A stretch of 11,639 nt of DNA from Octopus sinensis (Eukaryota). The notes beneath the pieces were generated by a model that searched no databases, had not been told where the DNA came from, and was given only the letters and a program-made list of their open reading frames with translations. The stretch covers positions 1-11,639 of the forward strand of contig NW_021826941.1 in assembly GCF_006345805.1 (NCBI RefSeq), in the 5' to 3' direction. Both the position numbers and the translations under genes were made by a program. Of this stretch, positions 152 through 11,639 are shown piece by piece; the first letter of the stretch is position 1; every line of letters starts with the position of its first letter.

Positions 152-217
152 TTAAATGCGGAGTATGCGTTTGTTAAATGCGGAGTATGCGTTTGTTAAA
201 TGCGGAGTATGCGTTTG
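152..217. repeat. Perfect tandem repeat, 22-bp unit TTAAATGCGGAGTATGCGTTTG x3
   Basis: Three identical units at 152-173, 174-195 and 196-217. Confidence 0.97.
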
Positions 218-885
218 TTTCTATGATAAACATCTCATACAGTTAGTTTGCATCAATTAGATTGTAGAGAGATAGGTATTCAGTAAAATTTTGGTGAGTT
301 CAATTAAGTGAAGTACTTATGTTGAACTAATCCACTTACTACACCACTTCACCAAATGTTTGGCATTGTAGCACAATCTATATTAGATTGATTATTTGAC
401 AGAATCGATACTACGACATACAAATTGCGATCAATTTAGGTTTCTTTAAAGATTGAGTTCAAATCTCAGTTTCTCTTTGAAAGAGCGGCAGGTTTTGGCT
501 AATAGATGGCTAAAGGCATTACAACATACTGTCAGTCTGTCTGTCTGCCTGTCTCCCTCCCTCCCCATCCCCATCTCTCTCCTTGTTCTGAGTTTAAACA
601 ACAGTTCCTGAGGATCAACAGTCTAGTTTTGTAAAAATTCGTGGAGAATTCATTAGTTTATTTATCTCCTTAACCACTTCATAAACTGTAAAAGGATTTG
701 CTAAGTTTAGCAGCAAATGAAGAAAGACGAAAATGAATAAAATAAAAAAATTAAAAAAAAAAGATCAAGAGGGAAGAAGAATACTTCAACTTTGAGAAGA
801 AGTACTTAACTTTTAAATATTTATTAACACTTATTATCTACAAAGCGCCTAATTGGGGCTAATTAGTGTGTGGAGGGTTTGGATT

Positions 886-1366: not shown

Positions 1367-1403
1367 TATTATTATTATTATATTATCATATTATATTATT
1401 CAT
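1311..1403. repeat. Compound (TTA)n/(ATC)n microsatellite; its right part serves as the tail or target of the minus-strand LINE copy
   Basis: Read directly. Abuts the LINE 3' terminus at 1404. Confidence 0.95.
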
Positions 1404-2165
1404 CAGTAGTATATTTTTTATATCGTGCTTTCACTTCACTACCGAGCGCAGCTCTGTGTGCCTTGGGTATGTGCTGTGTGATATGTTGTGATGCTCTGAT
1501 GGTTATTGTATGGAAAGTGTTCTGCGTAGGATGTGTGCAGTGTCTAGTAGTGCAATTTTCTGTATATTATATGTGTTTGTAAGTCCTGGTGTTTTTGTTA
1601 TGTATTTGTCTGAAATTTTTTTATCATGCCTAATGCACCTATTATGATAGGAATTGTTTCTGTTTTAGATTCTACATTCTGGTTACATTCTATTTCCAGG
1701 TCTTAACTATTTGAAAGTTTCTCCATTTCTTTTAGAGACAGTTGTCATCCGCTGGTATTGATACATCAATTAGAAAACATTTCTTTCTTCATGATCTTGA
1801 CAACTATATCTGGGTGTTGGCCTTAATTTCTCTATCTGTGTGTATTGGCATATCCCAGAGTATTGGTTGCTTTCTAGTTTTCTGTGACCTTTTCTGGTCT
1901 GTGCCTATACCATCTTTTTTCTGTTGGTATCCATAATGTTGGCATAGTTTCCAGTGTATATAGGCCCCAAATCTGTCGTGTCTGTGAATATATTCCTTCT
2001 TAGCCAGGACTGGGCAGCCAGAGATAATATGATTTATTGTTTCTTGCCCCATCTCCACATATTCTGCAGTTACTTGTTATATCTTTTCATTACATTTTTG
2101 GTAATTTCTGGTGGGGAGGCTTTGGTCTTGTGCTGCAATTAAAAATCCTTCTGTCTCTGCTTTTC
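1404..2165 (-). mobile_element. R4/Dong-like non-LTR retrotransposon, 5'-truncated 3' fragment (zinc-knuckle region, REL endonuclease, 3' UTR), frameshifted
   Basis: Across frameshifts the minus strand reads AETEGFLIAAQDQSLPTRNYQ...QETINHIISGCPVLAKKEYIHRHDRFGAYIHWKLCQHYG...ILWDMPIHTDREIKAN-PDIVVKDH..CFLIDVSIP..KEMEKLS...PGLTNTYNIQKIALLDTAHILRRTLSIQ*. It contains RHD and the PD (1808-1813)...D...K REL motif. 1404-1588 is ~96% identical by eye to the reverse complement of 3941-4123. Confidence 0.9.
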
Positions 2166-2166
2166 A

Positions 2167-4123
2167 GGGTTACTTTGGCACATCCTCTAATCCAAATCCT
2201 GAAACTTTAACAGCATATAGCAGAGCCAGAGGACAATGCATGAATGGCTCACGAAGGGGAAAAACCATCTTAATTCCCAAAATCAAATGAAACAACAAAA
2301 CCAGAAAACTACAGACCAATAACCTGCCTCTCCTACTATGTTCAAGGCATTTACTGCAGTGATATCGCAAAGGCTGAAAAGCACCTGGACGAAAACAAAC
2401 TGTTCCCAGAAGAGCAGAAAGGATGCCGCAAGGGTATATGGCTGTAAAGATCAACTAATGATTAATAAAGCCGTAACTGAAGACAGCCACAGAAAGAAGA
2501 AAGGCCTCAGTATGGCTGGATTGACTACAAAAAGGCCGTTGATAGCACCCCCCACACATGGATCCTCGAAACACTAGCTATTAACAAAAGTTAGCACCAA
2601 CAATCATAAAAATTCATAGAGCACTCTATGAATAAATGGCAAACAGTCCTACAGCTCCAAACAAAAGAGGACTCATGAAAACCAAAGACATCCCCATTAG
2701 AAGAGGAATATTCCAGGGAGACATGCTCTCTCCACTCCTTTTCTGCTTGGCACTGTCACCTCTATCTGATATGCTAAATAGAACTGGATGCGGATATAAA
2801 TGTTACGGCAAAACGATCAGCCACCTTTTATATATGGATGACCTAAAACTATACGCTGCAAATGACCAAACAGCTGGAAACACTATTAAAGACAGTTCAT
2901 GGATTTACCAAAGAAATAGATATGAAATTGGATTAGAAAAATGCGCCAAAGTAACCATGAAAAGAGGACAAAGGGAAAACTAGTTAAGAGTAACAACATC
3001 ACACTAGATAAAACCCATGAAATAAAAGAATTAGACCAAAGCCAAACTTACAAATACTTAGGAATCCATGAACTAGATAAGACACAACACACACAAATGA
3101 AAGAGGAGGAAATAAAAAAAGAAATTATAGACGAGTTAGATCAATACTAAAAACAGAGCTCAATGCTAAAAACAAGATAATATGTATCAACACTTTAGCT
3201 GTCCCAGTTATAAGTTACAGCTACAATATCCTTAACTGGACACGAAATGAACTGTCCAAAATAGATAGGAAAACAAGAAAAATACTGACAGGATCTAGGA
3301 TGCATCACCCAAAATCTGACATAGAAAGACTATATATAAACGTATAGAAGGTGGTAGAGGCCTTATACAGCTGGAAAACTACTATAAAATAACCACCATA
3401 GGACTGCAAAAATACCTACTTCAGAAGGAAGGAAAACTGATCCAGATAGCAGCAAAACACGAGCAAACAAAAAAACTGTTCTCAGTATTTAAGGAAGCTG
3501 ACAAATACAAACAAGAAATCATACCACCTAATAAACACAAAGAAGAAGAAGATGAAGAAGAAACAACAAAAGCTATAAAACAAATGAAATCAAACTAAAA
3601 ATAGAACAGCAACGAGCCATGATTAAAACGATGGCAAGAAAAACCCCTTCATGGTAAATACTGCACTAAATAACGCAAAAAGAAATAGACAAAGAAAAAT
3701 CAGCAATGGTTGAGAAGCTCAGGACTCAAAGCAGAGAAACATAGGGATTTTTAATTGCAGCACAAGACCAAAGCCTCCCCACCAGAAATTACCAAAAACA
3801 TGTAATGAAAAGAAATATTACAAGTAACTGCAGAATATGTGGAGATGGACAAGAAACAATAAATCATATTACCTCTAGCTGCCCAGTCCTGGCTAAGAAG
3901 GAATATATTCACAGACATGACAGAGTTGGAACCTACATACCAGGACTTACAAACACATATAATATACAGAAAATTGCACTACTAGGCACTGCACACATCC
4001 TACGCAGAACACTTTCCATACAATAACCATCAGAGCATCACAACAAATCACAGCACATACCCAAGGCACACAGAGCTGCGCTCGGTAGTGAAGTGAAAGC
4101 ACGCTATAAAAATAAAACTACTG
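2167..4123 (+). mobile_element. R4/Dong-like non-LTR retrotransposon, 5'-truncated (RT, CCHC, deleted REL core, 3' UTR), multiply frameshifted
   Basis: RT motifs WLTKGKTILIPK, YRPITCL (2310-2330), QGDMLSPLLF (QGD 2714-2722) and HLLYMDDLKLY (YMDD 2831-2842), plus YKYLG. C-x2-C-x8-H-x4-C knuckle at 3829-3882. C-terminus IQKIALLGTAHILRRTL* is typical of R4-clade elements. Ends in an (AAT)6 tail. Clade assignment is from motif recognition, not a database search. Confidence 0.9.
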
Positions 4124-4141
4124 AATAATAATAATAATAAT
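4124..4141 (+). repeat. (AAT)6 tail or target at the LINE 3' end
   Basis: Immediately follows the terminal ...ACTACTG shared by both LINE copies. Confidence 0.9.
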
Positions 4142-5371: not shown

Positions 5372-5381
5372 TATTACTATA
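5372..5381. repeat. Target-site duplication of the RTE element, copy 1 (TATTACTATA)
   Basis: Identical 10-mer at 8482-8491. The two copies sit exactly at the element's 3' and 5' ends. Confidence 0.85.
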
Positions 5382-5412
5382 GTCCTTCTTAGCTTCACTT
5401 CGCTGACGAATA

Positions 5413-7830
5413 TTAGGAAGGCTGTTGTCCACATTGTCTGCACGCTCTTTCGTGGCTGATAAGGTCGATGTGGGATCGACATATCCGATTGCAATGATGC
5501 TTGTCTAGGGTCTGATGATGCAGCAGCATTATGTTTTCGCCTCTGACGTTTCTCTTCAAGAGAGGCACTGCGAGAGGTCTCAAAGAAGGAAACAACATCG
5601 CTAATGAATGTCGCAAACGCTCAGGGACTGCGTCAAGGAGTCCTTGTAACGCTTCTTTGGTGCCCCCTGTTGCGGTGGCCAATGGTGAGCTCACCGTACA
5701 TGATGATCTTGAGTAGGCGGTGATCCTTCATCCTGTCAACGTGTCTTGCCCAACGTAATCGTGTCTCAAGTAAAATGGCTTACAGACTGGTGACCTTTGC
5801 TCACTTGAGGACCTCAGTGCTGGTAATGTAGTCGCTATAGTAGATGTGGATGGGACGAAAGCAGCGTTGATGAAAAGGTTCAAGGACTCTGAGATGAGAG
5901 CGTTAGGGGATCAGGACTCAGAGTCATATAGGAGTGTCGAGATGACGGCGGTTCTGTAGACTCTGACTTTTGTGCTGATCTTAAAATGCTTATTATTCCA
6001 CACATACTTGTGCAGTCTACCAAATGCTTTGTTTGCTTTTGAAAGTCTCTTGTCAATTTCTTTGTTGATAATCGCATCTGATAAACTGATACATCCAAGA
6101 TAAGTGACCTGCTGTACCAATTGTTTCGGCAATGATGATGTGGGACATCCTGTACTCTTCCTGAGGAGTTGGTTGGTGTAGGACTTCACACTTTTTCAAG
6201 CTTACTTCCAGCCCGAAGAACTGGGCGGCCTCTGCAAAGCAGAGCGCTGCAGGTCTCTTTCTGCGTGTGCAACAAGTGCAGCATCATCTGCAAAGAGGAG
6301 TTCCTGGATCACTTACTCTTGAGTCTTGGTGTGGGCTAGTAGGCGCCGGACGTTGAAAAGTCTGCCGTCCTGATATAGAGGCCATCTTCAGTGTCGAGGT
6401 CTGTAGTGGCCTGCTTGAGCATCGTGCTGAAGAAGATGCTGAAGAGAGTTGGTGCTAGGACACAGCCCTGCTTCACGCAGTTGTTGATGAGGAATGGCTC
6501 TGATATGTCGCTATTCAGGCGGACTTGTCCTTGCCGGTTTTCGAGAAGTTGAATGATCCTGGTTAGGAGTTTTGGGGGACAGCCAAGTCGGTTTAGTATC
6601 TTCGACAGATATTTCCTGCTCACAGTGTCGAGAGTTTTCGTCAGATCGACGAATGTTATATAACGTGGCTTGTTTTGGTCCCGGCACTTTTCTTGGAGTT
6701 GTTTAAGAATGAAAACTTATCTGTTTTGCTCCTTTTGGATCTGAAATCACATTGGCTTTCTGGAAGACAATGGGCAGAACATCGATTTTATTAAACCAAT
6801 CCTTGTTCTTTTTCTTCGTAAACCCAAGGATTTCTGCAGAGGTCTGTTGGATGGCGGTTTTCAGTTGTTCCCATAGGATGTCTGGCGATTGGATTTATCA
6901 AGCTTTGCCTGTAGTCCGACCTGGAAGTTTACTTTCACTTAGTTTAACTGCCTATTGCTTGTTTTGATTTTTATGTTGGGAGGTCCTGTCTTATTTGTTG
7001 GTTTAGGCTTGAAGTGGAGTTTTGAGTTTGCAACGGATCAGGCGATGGTCAGTATGGCATTCTGCGCTAGGCACCACCCTAGTGTGCATGATGTCGACTG
7101 GTTTCATTGGTGCACTAGGACGTAATCAAGGAGCTGCCAGTATTATGATTGGAGATGCATCCAGGTTGTTTTCAGACTGTCTCTTTGCTGGAAGATGGTA
7201 TTGGTTATAACGAGGTGATGTTCGGAGTAGAACTCAAACAAGTATCGCCCGTTGTCGTTGCAGTTCCCAACCCCGTGCTTTCCAAGGACTTCTTTCCAAG
7301 TTTCTGAATCTCGACCCACTCTGGCGTTGAAATATCCTAGGATTATGACTTCATCATCGGCGGGGGTTCCTGGAGGAGTCTGCACAGGTCTGAGTAGAAA
7401 CATTTACCTTGTCTGCTGGATCTGCTTGGAAGGTCAGAGAGTAAACACTGAAGATTGTGACAATCCGATTGTTTTCCAGAGAAACTCTCATGGAGAGGAT
7501 GCCGTCAGAATGACCTGCTGGTAAGGTTTCCAGCATTGAAGTAATTGGAGTTTCTTTTCATGAAATCGACATCTGAACGGCGTCTTTCTGATGGGGGTTT
7601 GCCTAACTAGTATACGGTGTGCCGGTACCATGTTCTTTCAAGCTGCCTTCCTCTGGGAAGTTCATGTGCAACGAGAACGGATCAGCGTTCTGCGTGACCT
7701 CTGTCACCGGAGTCAAGAATGGTTCTGACGTCCCAACATGCGATCTTCAAACATTTGGCAACATTTGAAGGGAGTTTGGAGTCTTTTCTTTTTGCATTTG
7801 TGCGTATTTGACCGCTTGAAGACGATGTCC
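5413..7830 (-). pseudogene. Disrupted RTE ORF (AP endonuclease + reverse transcriptase + C-terminal Cys/His region)
   Basis: EN motifs: LKIACWDVRTIL, VIILGYFNARVG, GVGNCNDNG, LVITNTIFQQ, TTWMH. RT motifs: LPESQCDFR, FVDLTKTLDTV, VKQGCVLAPTLFSIFF, LLFADDA (FADDA 6280-6294), TYLG, KVRVYRTAVISTLLY. C-terminus CNRICRSHIDLISHERAC. Many stops and frameshifts. The start coordinate is approximate. Confidence 0.9.
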
Positions 7831-8341
7831 GATAGCCGTGATTTGCCAAGTGAATGTGTAAGAAACGAGATTTCTTTAGGCTACCTTTTCTAAGCCCCTG
7901 GACAAGGTTGCTTGGTTGTTCGGAATGCTGCCGAGTGATGTCGTCTCCGAGTCAACACCAAGCGACCAATGTCCTGAATAACTGCATGCATGTTGGGAAT
8001 TGCGGCTTCCAGTAGCATATTCCACCTCCCATTTTCGCCCCCTTCCCATCGTTACAAGGCTTGGAGAGTTGCAATCGTAGTCGTGGACATGGGCTGATAC
8101 TTCGGTTTGTGTGATGGAGTTTTAAGGTGAAGCGCAGTCTGTGCAGAAGTGGCCTTACCCTTTACACCCGGAGTTCATCTGCCGTGGCCCAGCAAGCTGG
8201 GTCGATGACAGAGAGGTCCTCGGGTTGTAGGTTTTATATCGCAGTGTCCTTCTCTTAGACAAGCTACCGATCATGGCTAATTAGTCCCATCTGCTCGGAG
8301 CAGCTTGGTTATACTGCGCCAGACACCCGCTGTCGTCCTCT

Positions 8342-8481
8342 CTTGTTGGTTTAGTTTCAGATGGTATCACGATGAGGTCCAGGTAGGACTTGGGGCTTGC
8401 CTCACTCTTTGGAAGTTTTAGCCCAATATGGTGCTCACCCAACAAGCTTCCGGTGAGTATGTGGACCTCCATTAACCACCT
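8342..8481 (-). ncRNA. HDV-like self-cleaving ribozyme fold at the RTE 5' terminus (degenerate in this copy)
   Basis: P1 AGGTGGT (8481-8475) pairs with ACCATCT (8365-8359), 7 bp. Long J1/2. P2 CTACCTGG (8386-8379) pairs partially with CCAACAAG (8349-8342). P3 ACC/GAT has one mismatch. L3 is TCATCGT. J4/2 ACTAA has a candidate catalytic C at 8354. Copy B (9197-9226) preserves ACC-TCTTCGT-GGT-ACCACCT-GG. Confidence 0.7.
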
Positions 8482-8491
8482 TATTACTATA
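8482..8491. repeat. Target-site duplication of the RTE element, copy 2 (TATTACTATA)
   Basis: Matches 5372-5381 exactly. Confidence 0.85.
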
Positions 8492-8657
8492 ATAGTTCCT
8501 AACATATCGAGACTTTCTCCTTATTATAGTGAAATCTTTGGATTATTTAATCCCTAATGAACCTGACAACCTCGAATTTACAATATATATATAATAAGGT
8601 AAGAACATAGAGAGGGAATTAATAAATTATTATTTATTAATTAAAAAAATGGCAAAC

Positions 8658-8697
8658 GTCCCTCACAGCTGTTTCACTTCCACACCTTCAGAAATTT
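8658..8697 (-). ncRNA. Inverted, more degenerate copy of the hammerhead-like motif
   Basis: Minus strand reads CTGAAGG (8691-8685)-TGTGGAAGT-GAAA-CAGCTG-TG. A9 is changed to G and the cleavage triplet is GTG, so it is expected to be inactive. Confidence 0.35.
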
Positions 8698-8826
8698 AAT
8701 TAAAATTATTTGGAAGTCGAATCTCTTCTGAGGCGTGCTGAGTAAACGGCTGCAAACCGGTAACAGTATACCTTAAACTACCCCTGAAGAGATTCGACTT
8801 TCAAATTATTTTTAATTTAGGTAATT

Positions 8827-8866
8827 AAGTCTCTGACGATCTGGAATTGAAACAGCTGTAAAGGAT
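8827..8866 (+). ncRNA. Minimal type-I hammerhead-like motif (Penelope-type), probably degenerate
   Basis: CTGACGA (8833-8839), 9 nt, GAAA (8849-8852), C-AGCT-G, then TA (cleavage would follow 8860). Palindromic helix III ACAGCTGT. Helix II lacks a canonical closing pair and helix I is weak. Confidence 0.45.
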
Positions 8867-9151
8867 GTTTGTCAACTTTTTAATTAATGAATAATAATTT
8901 ATTAATTACTTCTCTATTTTCTCATCTTATTGTAATAAATAAATATATATAAACCACGGTTTATATAGTTACCTTGCAGTTGAGTATTATATATAATGGT
9001 CAATATTCTTTGTATCGGTAACTAACCAGTACTTTCATAGGATTTTGCTGTCCCTCAATGAGGTTTGTAACCTTTATTTGTGCTTATATATCTTAAATTA
9101 CGATGAAAGTCAACAAATTTTGCTTTAGAAGCGTTGAGATGTATTGAAGGA

Positions 9152-9360
9152 TACAGAAATAATTTATTCTCAAACGCATGAGACTCGAACTCACATCCAG
9201 GTGGTACCACGAAGAGGTCGAAGTAGGACTTGGGGCTTACCTCACACTTTGGAAGTTTTAGCCCAGTATGATGCTCACCCAACAAGCACCCAGTGACTTT
9301 GTGGATAGTTTATCCTGTTCATGCTATTGTATTAGCATTTGAGAATAAATGATTTCTGTA
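9152..9360. mobile_element. MITE-like element with ~24-28-bp terminal inverted repeats and TA flanks (Tc1/mariner-type layout), carrying an RTE 5'-UTR/ribozyme fragment
   Basis: 9150-9177 GATACAGAAATAATTTATTCTCAAACGC matches the reverse complement of 9335-9362 at 26/28. The layout is TA|CAG...CTG|TA. Interior 9198-9305 matches 8358-8465 at 94/108 with no indels. Confidence 0.65.
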
Positions 9361-9364
9361 TCTT

Positions 9365-9441
9365 TTTATATATATAAACATACATTAATATATATATAAT
9401 ATTCATATATGTTATATATACGTGTGTGTAAACAATGTATG

Positions 9442-9489
<48 letters not shown>

Positions 9490-9570
9490 ATATTATATAT
9501 ATATATACATATGTATGTATACATACCACACTCACACACATACACATATGTATATAGTTTGTATACATAT
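9365..9570. repeat. Compound (TA)n/(TG)n/(CA)n/(TATG)n microsatellite
   Basis: Read directly. Confidence 0.95.
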
Positions 9571-9780
9571 AGAATGTATTAGGTATGTATGATTAGGTAA
9601 AAGGGCTTTCATTTTACTGTCAAAAACCGAAGAGGAAAACATGGTCAGCGGTGTCAACTGCTCTGAAAGGCAAAGGAAATCTATTTCCGTATTTGGGTTT
9701 TTCACGTTTTCCGTTCATGATTTCCTTGGCCTCCAGCAAAACAATAAAGTCAAGAAATAAATATATGAGCAAAAAAAAGA

Positions 9781-11194: not shown

Positions 11195-11412
11195 CAAACA
11201 CACACACTCATCATCATCATCATCATTGTTCGACCGTATAAACAGATAAATATACAGAAAGATAGATAGACTGATAAATAGATAGTTAGATAGATTGATA
11301 AATAAGTTGATATAGGTATAGTTATACATGCATATCTATATATCAATCTATCTATCGATCATCTCCATCTCTTGTATATATATAAATATATACACACGCA
11401 TATATATATATA
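11195..11412. repeat. Compound (CA)n/(ATC)n/(GATA)n/(TATC)n/(TA)n microsatellite region
   Basis: Read directly. The terminal (TA)n abuts the SINE 3' end. Confidence 0.9.
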
Positions 11413-11639
11413 TTTCTTTACTACCCACAAGGGCTAAACATAGAGGGGACAAACAAGGACAGACAAGGGATTAAGTCGATTATCGACCCCAGTGTGTAAC
11501 TGGTACTTATTTAATCGACCCCGAAAGGATGAAAGGCAAAGTAGACCTCGGCGGAATTATGAACTCAGAACGTAGCGGCAGGCGAAATACAGCTACGCAT
11601 TTCGCCCGGCGTGCTAACGTTTCTGCCAGCTCACCGCCT
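11413..11639 (-). mobile_element. Second tRNA-derived SINE family (octopus-type) with a MetaSINE/Sauria-like central domain
   Basis: Minus-strand head AGGCGGTGAGCTGGCAGAAACGTTAG (A-box-like 11618-11628), B-box-like GAGTTCATAATTCC (11553-11566), central CTTTGCCTTTCATCCTTTCGGGGTCGATTAAATAAGTACC and a (TA)n tail. The head reaches the window edge. Superfamily assignment is from memory. Confidence 0.8.

What the first reader, a model, noticed from the sequence alone, without database searches (positions are those of the whole stretch)
9150..9362. MITE-like element that has captured the catalytic-core half of the RTE HDV-like ribozyme
Seen: 26/28-bp inverted termini with a TA|CAG...CTG|TA layout enclose a 108-bp segment that is 87% identical, without indels, to the RTE 5' UTR 840 bp away. 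This copy retains the canonical core better than the RTE copy: P3 ACC/GGT, L3 TCTTCGT, P1 3' strand ACCACCT and the P1.1 GG. It lacks the original P1 5' strand and the CTAA/P2 3' strand, although GGGTGCT (9291-9285) could substitute as a 6/7-bp P1 partner. Inference: a DNA-transposon-type vehicle carrying a retroelement ribozyme module, which would be an unusual chimera. The 13% divergence argues against a recent local duplication. A split core might be completed in trans or by flanking sequence. A one-off insertion with inverted target rearrangement is the alternative.
Basis: partly seen in the sequence, partly recalled or inferred. Interest (0 to 1): 0.78.

Follow-up and report, generated by a model that had tools for sequence, protein, structure and literature searches.

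The report
MITE-like repeat holding a dead ribozyme fragment
A 209-bp inverted-repeat element next to an RTE retrotransposon really does enclose about 110 nt copied from that retrotransposon's 5' ribozyme region, but the copy lacks the catalytic part and looks like ordinary transposon debris rather than a working chimera.

Summary
The sequence facts are correct. Positions 9150-9177 and 9335-9362 are a 26/28 inverted repeat laid out as TA|CAG...CTG|TA. Positions 9198-9305 match 8358-8465 at 94/108 without gaps.

The neighbour at 5382-8481 (minus strand) is a full-length, decayed RTE-like LINE with a 10-bp target duplication. Its first 147 nt fit an HDV-like double pseudoknot. A related RTE from an ENA metagenome contig (L004) keeps this fold, with two compensatory pairs. 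The fold has a large J1/2 domain and no P4 helix, and it scores below Rfam thresholds.

The cargo corresponds to RTE nt 17-125: J1/2, the P2 5' strand, P3/L3, the P1 3' strand and P1.1. It lacks the P1 5' strand, J4/2 with the likely catalytic C, and the P2 3' strand. Nothing inside the element replaces these parts. The 6/7 "substitute P1" occurs by chance about 15% of the time.

Most likely this is a TA-flanked non-autonomous DNA-transposon copy whose interior is RTE-derived filler, acquired by repair template switching or by nested insertion plus deletion. It should be catalytically inert.

Whether the TIR and cargo form a multi-copy family could not be tested, because no available collection holds the source genome. 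Interest is low.

The parts
9152..9153 (.). Left TA, a putative target-site duplication (also part of the palindrome)
   Evidence: Sequence read directly
9154..9177 (+). Left terminal inverted repeat, CAGAAATAATTTATTCTCAAACGC
   Evidence: 2 matches, 0 expected; 26/28 over 9150-9177
9178..9195 (-). Element-specific subterminal sequence not found in the RTE. On the minus strand it forms a small hairpin, GTGAG-TTCGAGT-CTCAT (9194-9178)
   Evidence: The Rfam alignment used it as a pseudo-P4 (13.1 bits, E = 4.8)
9196..9305 (-). Cargo: a copy of RTE 5' UTR nt 17-125. It holds the J1/2 domain (9305-9230), P2 5' strand (9229-9221), P3 5' ACC (9218-9216), L3 (9215-9209), P3 3' GGT (9208-9206), P1 3' strand ACCACCT (9205-9199) and P1.1 GG (9198-9197)
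   Evidence: (D9)
9306..9334 (.). Element-specific subterminal sequence with no match elsewhere in the window or in the related loci
9335..9358 (-). Right terminal inverted repeat (reverse complement CAGAAATCATTTATTCTCAAATGC)
9359..9360 (.). Right TA, a putative target-site duplication
5382..8481 (-). Source family: a full-length but decayed RTE-like LINE of 3100 bp. It has an RT domain and an APE region homologous to L004's Exo_endo_phos ORF
5372..5381 (.). RTE target-site duplication TATTACTATA, 3' side of the element
   Evidence: (D19)
8482..8491 (.). RTE target-site duplication TATTACTATA. It fixes the RTE 5' end at 8481
   Evidence: (D19)
8335..8481 (-). Putative HDV-like ribozyme of the RTE: P1 8481-8475 with 8365-8359; J1/2 8474-8390; P2 8389-8385 and 8382-8381 with 8343-8342 and 8339-8335; P3 8378-8376 with 8368-8366; L3 8375-8369; P1.1 8374-8373 with 8358-8357; J4/2 8356-8344 (conserved CC at 8349-8348); no P4

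Best explanation
The unit at 9152-9360 is one copy of a small non-autonomous cut-and-paste DNA element. It is MITE-like and probably of the Tc1/mariner type, because it is bounded by TA and its ends read CAG...CTG. Just over half of its interior (110 of the 157 bp between the repeats) is filler copied from the 5' UTR of an RTE-type LINE.

The filler most likely entered in one of two ways. One is template switching while a double-strand break left by transposon excision was being repaired (abortive gap repair). The donor could have been the RTE copy 716 bp away or another family member. The other route is a slightly 5'-truncated RTE insertion into the element, followed by deletion of the rest.

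The copied piece is RTE nt 17-125. It contains the J1/2 peripheral domain, the 5' strand of P2, P3/L3, the 3' strand of P1 and the P1.1 guanines of the RTE's HDV-like ribozyme. It omits the 5' strand of P1, J4/2 with the probable catalytic cytosine, and the 3' strand of P2. The fragment therefore cannot fold into the double pseudoknot or cleave. It is a fossil that happens to preserve ancestral core bases.

Shown: the inverted repeat, the homology and its limits, the missing parts, and the direction of transfer. Inferred: mobility, the capture mechanism, and lack of activity.
For: - Inverted repeat 26/28, non-random. TA|CAG...CTG|TA layout. The single strand folds at -30.8 kcal/mol against -18.1 +/- 3.2 for shuffles, z = -3.9. 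No ORF lies in the element.
- Cargo 94/108 identical to the RTE 5' UTR, ungapped.
- The same segment sits at the homologous place in an independent RTE (L004 3452-3837, 72% identity to window RTE nt 5-382). Homology between the two RTEs continues on both sides of the cargo limits.
- The RTE 5' end is fixed by a 10-bp TSD. Its first 7 nt (AGGTGGT) pair with the 7 nt that follow P3.
- The HDV-like fold is 90.7% paired across the three sequences, against 42-56% when partners are slid. It has two compensatory pairs.
- The best Rfam match at both copies is the HDV-like family drz-agam-1.
- No P2 3' strand exists inside the element, and only a chance-level P1 5' strand.
- Polarised with L004, 8 of 15 differences arose in the RTE copy, 4 in the cargo, and 3 are ambiguous. 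The two TIR arms differ at 2/28. Both are compatible with one old event.
- Capture of sequence from other loci by template switching during gap repair is an established route (PMC3814204).
Against: - Only one copy is known. The defining MITE property, many copies, could not be tested. Pattern scans of JGI metagenomes, IMG/VR and GTDB genomes gave only chance hits. The window's ORFs are absent from the protein collection.
- No transposase or second TIR lies in the window.
- The TA cannot be separated from the palindrome. Weaker complementarity continues 21 nt outward (15/21), so the true ends are uncertain.
- No clear microhomology is visible at the cargo junctions.
- The ribozyme assignment rests on three sequences. 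The shuffle control is not significant (143/500), the Rfam scores are far below threshold, and an alternative pairing of nt 10-20 with P3/L3 exists.
Confidence: 0.55

Rival explanations
1. A one-off local structure that was never mobile. A short piece of RTE 5' UTR became embedded in a pre-existing AT-rich palindrome or in a locally generated inverted duplication. The piece could be repair filler, or the remnant of a 5'-truncated insertion that later lost nearly all its length.
For: - Only one copy is seen.
- Complementarity continues beyond the TA at 15/21 (I11).
- Joining the flanks gives a palindromic AAGGAT|ATCTTT site.
- The region is full of AT-rich palindromes and holds a second foldback.
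- A donor RTE lies 716 bp away in the same orientation.
- A stray ~50-bp piece of the other half of a related RTE 5' UTR sits in unrelated AT-rich DNA in L006, so isolated 5' UTR scraps do occur without TIRs.
Against: - The 24-28-nt arms are complex sequence, not microsatellite, and end in CAG/CTG next to TA as Tc1/mariner-type ends do.
- Palindromic AT-rich targets are the known preference of TA-inserting transposons (own knowledge), so the outer complementarity also fits insertion.
- 47 bp of element-specific sequence lies between the arms and the cargo.
Confidence: 0.3
2. A functional module. The element spreads half of an HDV-like ribozyme that is completed in trans, or by flanking sequence. 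Alternatively its transcript acts on RTE RNA by pairing with the RTE 5' end, or serves as antisense or small-RNA precursor.
For: - The core P3/L3/P1 3'/P1.1 bases are intact and match the drz-agam-1 consensus at 12 of 13 positions.
- The cargo is less decayed than the RTE copy in the core.
- GGGTGCT pairs 6/7 with the P1 3' strand.
Against: - There is no J4/2 with a catalytic C and no P2 3' strand within the element. The best P2 partner lies 140 nt outside it.
- The 6/7 P1 partner is expected by chance in about 15% of shuffles and depends on a cargo-specific mutation.
- Rfam gives 13.1 bits against a gathering score of 37.
- 4 cargo-specific substitutions in 110 nt match the TIR decay rate, which suggests neutral evolution.
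- There is no evidence of transcription.
Confidence: 0.03
3. Reverse direction. The 108-nt block is native to the inverted-repeat element, or to a third repeat, and was acquired by the RTE family as part of its 5' UTR.
For: The block is shared, and by itself it folds into a long hairpin.
Against: - An RTE that is only about 70% identical, from another organism (L004), carries the block at the same position. Homology there continues on both sides.
- The block's ACCACCT pairs with the RTE's own terminal heptamer, and this pairing covaries in L004.
- The element holds only an internal, truncated part of that structure.
Confidence: 0.03

Closest known systems
Stowaway-like / Tc1-mariner-derived MITEs formed by abortive gap repair (for example Gnome, Elf and Goblin from Ozma in Aedes aegypti, PMC3814204)
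   Same: About 200 bp, TIRs of roughly 25 bp, TA flanks, no coding capacity, strong hairpin potential. The interior can include sequence brought in by template switching during repair.
   Different: Copy number and a parent transposase are unknown here. The interior is not derived from a transposase gene but from a LINE 5' UTR. No microhomology scars are recognisable.
HDV-like self-cleaving ribozymes at the 5' ends of non-LTR retrotransposons (R2, RTE, baggins, L1Tc; drz-Agam families; PMC6765202, PMC3774820, PMC4908430)
   Same: The donor RTE shows P1 starting at the exact element terminus, an ACC/GGT P3, a 7-nt L3 ending in CGU, P1.1, P2, and a long J1/2 domain as in drz-Agam-2-1.
   Different: The donor has no P4 helix and starts with A-U rather than G.U in this copy (G.U in L004). 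It scores below Rfam thresholds. The element holds only nt 17-125 and so is not a ribozyme.
Non-autonomous retroelements that keep a LINE 5' ribozyme (for example NARTc, which keeps the L1Tc 5' ribozyme; own knowledge)
   Same: A short non-coding element carries sequence from the ribozyme region of an autonomous LINE.
   Different: Those keep the complete ribozyme and the LINE 3' end and move by retrotransposition. This one has inverted repeats, no LINE 3' tail and an incomplete ribozyme.

Membership tests
MITE (non-autonomous class II element) | Small size (under about 800 bp) and no coding capacity | tested here: met
   209 bp. No ORF is listed in the element, and every reading frame on both strands contains stop codons
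MITE (non-autonomous class II element) | Terminal inverted repeats | tested here: met
   26/28, 0 expected by chance
MITE (non-autonomous class II element) | Target-site duplication typical of a superfamily (TA for Tc1/mariner) | tested here: inconclusive
   TA lies on both sides, but TA is palindromic and continuous with the repeat. No 3-, 4-, 8- or 9-bp direct duplication is present
MITE (non-autonomous class II element) | Many near-identical copies in the genome | not testable with these tools
   The source genome is absent from all searchable collections. There is one copy in the 11.6-kb window
MITE (non-autonomous class II element) | An autonomous partner whose TIRs match | not testable with these tools
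   ORFs of 80 aa or more show no transposase in the window.
HDV-like ribozyme (the element's cargo) | P1 helix of 6-7 bp whose 5' strand starts at the cleavage site | tested here: not met
   The native 5' strand (RTE nt 1-7) is absent. The only 6/7 substitute is at chance level, p about 0.15
HDV-like ribozyme (the element's cargo) | P3, L3 and P1.1 | tested here: met
   ACC/GGT, UCUUCGU, GG
HDV-like ribozyme (the element's cargo) | J4/2 with catalytic C, and the P2 3' strand closing the outer pseudoknot | tested here: not met
   Homology stops right after the P1.1 GG, at RTE nt 125-126. There is no complement to the P2 5' strand inside the element
HDV-like ribozyme (the element's cargo) | Score above the gathering threshold of an Rfam HDV-like model | tested here: not met
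   drz-agam-1 scores 13.1 bits, E = 4.8, against a gathering score of 37
HDV-like ribozyme (the donor RTE, 8481-8335) | Nested double pseudoknot (P1, P1.1, P2, P3) with support from comparison | tested here: inconclusive
   90.7% of cells paired against 42-56% when slid, with 2 compensatory pairs. But there are only 2-3 sequences, the shuffle control is 143/500, there is no P4, and Rfam gives 16.1 bits against 37
HDV-like ribozyme (the donor RTE, 8481-8335) | Self-cleavage | not testable with these tools
   Needs a transcription and cleavage assay
RTE-clade LINE (the neighbour at 5382-8481) | Short (about 3.2 kb) APE+RT element with TSD and no poly(A) | tested here: met
   3100 bp with a 10-bp TSD. 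RVT_1 at E = 7.5e-12. The APE region is homologous to L004's Exo_endo_phos ORF. Clade placement by phylogeny was not done

The most novel reading that the evidence does not exclude
The TIR-plus-cargo unit is a multi-copy MITE family that spreads the substrate-binding and peripheral half of the RTE's HDV-like ribozyme through the genome. Its transcripts then interact with RTE RNA, either by pairing with the RTE 5' terminal heptamer or as antisense and small-RNA precursors. This would be a DNA transposon that has co-opted a retrotransposon's processing signal.
Probability: 0.04. Interest if true: 0.6.

Novelty: new member of a known kind. Interest (0 to 1): 0.2.

Why it matters
It matters little in itself. 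Nested and chimeric transposon remnants are common, and this one cannot be a ribozyme.

It has two modest uses. First, the fragment preserves ancestral states of the RTE ribozyme core that the adjacent full-length copy has lost. Together with the L004 homologue, this helps define an RTE ribozyme variant with a long J1/2 domain and no P4 helix that current Rfam models miss. Second, it is a cautionary example for motif-based ribozyme searches: a well-preserved P3-L3-P1 3' strand core can sit in DNA that lacks the rest of the fold.

Tried and rejected
- Rfam on the whole window at E up to 10 gave no ribozyme. The only hits were microsatellite-driven miRNA artefacts. On the two short regions only sub-threshold drz-agam-1 hits appeared.
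- tRNA-like origin of the GTGAG-TTCGAGT-CTCAT hairpin: ARAGORN found nothing.
- Finding more copies:
  - The peptide of the open frame across the 5' UTR had no homologues.
  - Scans for the ribozyme core, the TIR and a conserved 18-19-mer were run against JGI metagenomes, IMG/VR and GTDB genomes. They gave nothing, or single chance hits in microbial genes.
  - Exact look-up of 8 window ORFs found none in the collection.
- Eight related RTE loci were fetched. Only L004 retains the 5' UTR. No TSD could be found for L004.
It was replaced by P2 nt 93-101 with 139-147.
- Completing the fold inside the element (P4 from the small hairpin, P2 from the TIR), as the Rfam alignment forced it, gives too few pairs.
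- Similarity of the element's non-cargo parts to the RTE, the foldback at 8590-8934 or any fetched locus: none.

Full report
**Setting.** The window is eukaryotic, AT-rich and full of microsatellites. On the minus strand, 5382-8481 is a 3100-bp APE+RT LINE of the RTE type.
- It is broken by many stops and frameshifts.
- It has an RT domain (Pfam RVT_1, 7.5e-12). Its best protein relatives are only about 55% identical.
- It is bounded by a perfect 10-bp target duplication, TATTACTATA, at 5372-5381 and 8482-8491 (D19, 17). The copy is therefore full-length, and its 5' end is fixed at 8481. On the minus strand it starts AGGTGGT.

**The observation.**
- 9150-9177 and 9335-9362 are complementary at 26 of 28 positions.
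- The 24-nt core occurs only at these two places, with none expected by chance.
- The ends read TA|CAG...CTG|TA.
- 9198-9305 equals 8358-8465 at 94/108 without gaps. The match can be extended to 9196, giving 110 nt with 15 differences.
- On the minus strand the cargo ends ...ACC TCTTCGT GGT ACCACCT GG.
- As single-stranded DNA the 209-nt unit folds much better than shuffles (-30.8 against -18.1 kcal/mol, z = -3.9).

**What the shared segment is.** Rfam gives nothing at threshold. The best match at both copies, on the minus strand, is the HDV-like family drz-agam-1, at 16.1 and 13.1 bits against a gathering score of 37.

One related RTE was recovered with its 5' UTR. It lies in an ENA metagenome contig at L004 3452-3837 and is 72% identical to window RTE nt 5-382. 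Aligning the window RTE, L004 and the cargo supports an HDV-like double pseudoknot:
- P1: nt 1-7 with 117-123
- P2: nt 93-97 and 100-101 with 139-140 and 143-147
- P3: nt 104-106 with 114-116
- P1.1: nt 108-109 with 124-125

In this fold 90.7% of cells are paired, against 42-56% when the partners are slid. There is one compensatory change in P1 (U-A to G-C) and one in P2 (U-A to C-G). P1 begins at the exact element terminus, as expected for a 5'-processing ribozyme. L004 has the canonical G.U first pair.

The J1/2 linker is about 85 nt. Large J1/2 domains are known in drz-Agam-2-1 (PMC4908430). No P4 helix exists: a conserved 13-nt J4/2 with a CCAA motif joins P1.1 to P2.

Four caveats apply. 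Only three sequences were available. The shuffle control is not significant. The structure was derived from these same sequences. An alternative pairing of nt 10-20 with P3/L3 is possible in both RTEs. I treat the ribozyme as probable, not shown.

**What the element holds and lacks.** The cargo is RTE nt 17-125. It holds the J1/2 domain, the P2 5' strand, P3, L3, the P1 3' strand and the P1.1 guanines. Homology stops right after P1.1 on one side and 16 nt short of the RTE terminus on the other. The two RTEs stay homologous beyond both limits.

Three parts are missing: the P1 5' strand, J4/2 with the probable catalytic C, and the P2 3' strand. Inside the element nothing pairs with the P2 5' strand. 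The 6/7 partner GGGTGCT is found at that quality in about 15% of shuffles, and one of its pairing bases is a cargo-specific change. The fragment cannot form the fold. "Catalytic-core half" overstates it.

**Direction and age.** The segment is native to the RTE. It sits at the same place in a distant RTE, and its ACCACCT pairs with the RTE's own terminus. Polarised with L004, the 15 differences split as follows: 8 arose in the neighbouring RTE copy, 4 in the cargo, and 3 are ambiguous. The 8 RTE-copy changes include all 4 polarisable core differences. The explanation is decay of the RTE copy, not selection on the cargo.

The cargo's rate of about 3.6% per lineage matches the 2/28 difference between the TIR arms. 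This fits a single old event followed by neutral decay. The data do not distinguish a donor 716 bp away from another family member.

**Mechanism.** The anatomy is that of a small TA-inserting cut-and-paste element. Non-autonomous elements of this kind arise by abortive gap repair after excision, and template switching during that repair can bring in sequence from other loci (PMC3814204). I take that as the most likely origin of the chimera. A nested, slightly 5'-truncated RTE insertion followed by deletion is a close second.

The main rival is a never-mobile local structure. Complementarity continues weakly for 21 nt outside the TA (15/21, I11). That could mean a pre-existing palindrome. It also fits the palindromic AT-rich targets that TA-inserting transposons prefer (own knowledge). 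A stray 50-bp piece of the other half of a related RTE 5' UTR sits in unrelated DNA in L006. This shows that such scraps also occur without TIRs.

**What could not be done.** The decisive test is the copy number of the TIR and of the TIR-cargo combination. It needs the source genome, which is not in any collection I could search.

**Verdict.** This is a MITE-like unit with RTE-derived filler, a known kind of transposon debris, carrying an incomplete and almost certainly inert ribozyme fragment. Interest is low. The P4-less, long-J1/2 RTE ribozyme next door is the more interesting object.

Noticed in passing
window 8335-8481 (minus strand); L004 3452-3607: The RTE's 5' end fits an HDV-like double pseudoknot with a J1/2 domain of about 85 nt and no P4 helix (13-nt J4/2 with conserved CCAA). 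It is missed by Rfam at threshold (16.1 bits against 37). Two compensatory pairs are seen against a relative that is 72% identical across the 5' UTR.
   Followed up: partly
window 8472-8462 with 8381-8370; same columns in L004: RTE nt 10-20 (ATGGAGGTCCA) can pair with the end of P2, P3 and L3 (TGGACCTCAT). The nested MFE uses this instead of P2/P3. The L004 heptamer TGGGGGC keeps 6/7 pairing. This may be a conserved alternative (inhibitory) helix, or evidence against the ribozyme fold.
   Followed up: partly
window 8590-8934: A second foldback or MITE-like element lies between the RTE 5' end and the candidate. Its arms are 8590-8702 and 8822-8934 (113 nt, 83% complementary), and the spacer is itself partly palindromic. 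It is unrelated in sequence to the candidate.
   Followed up: no
window 1394-4133: A decayed second LINE (RT with YMDD, Pfam RVT_1 2e-17) is flanked by inverted arms of about 400 bp (1394-1599 plus 1956-2158 against 3735-4133, 91-95% identical), with a 356-bp insert in the left arm. It looks like an inverted duplication of the element's 3' part.
   Followed up: no
L006 3451-3496 (minus strand): An isolated piece of about 50 bp from the 3' half of an L004-like RTE ribozyme region (P1 3' strand through P2 3' strand) lies in unrelated AT-rich DNA, next to a local tandem duplication. It comes from a different ENA metagenome sample.
   Followed up: no
window 152-219: Three exact tandem copies of a 22-bp unit, TTAAATGCGGAGTATGCGTTTGTT.
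   Followed up: no
window 9412-9590 and 11281-11413: Sub-threshold Rfam miRNA hits (mir-297, mir-3149, mir-4536 and others) fall on TA/TG/CA microsatellites and are composition artefacts.
   Followed up: yes
window 8410-8428 / 9250-9268: The 19-mer CTTTGGAAGTTTTAGCCCA, identical in both copies, has six exact hits in bacterial genomes. They lie in unrelated genes, and the count is close to chance expectation.
   Followed up: yes
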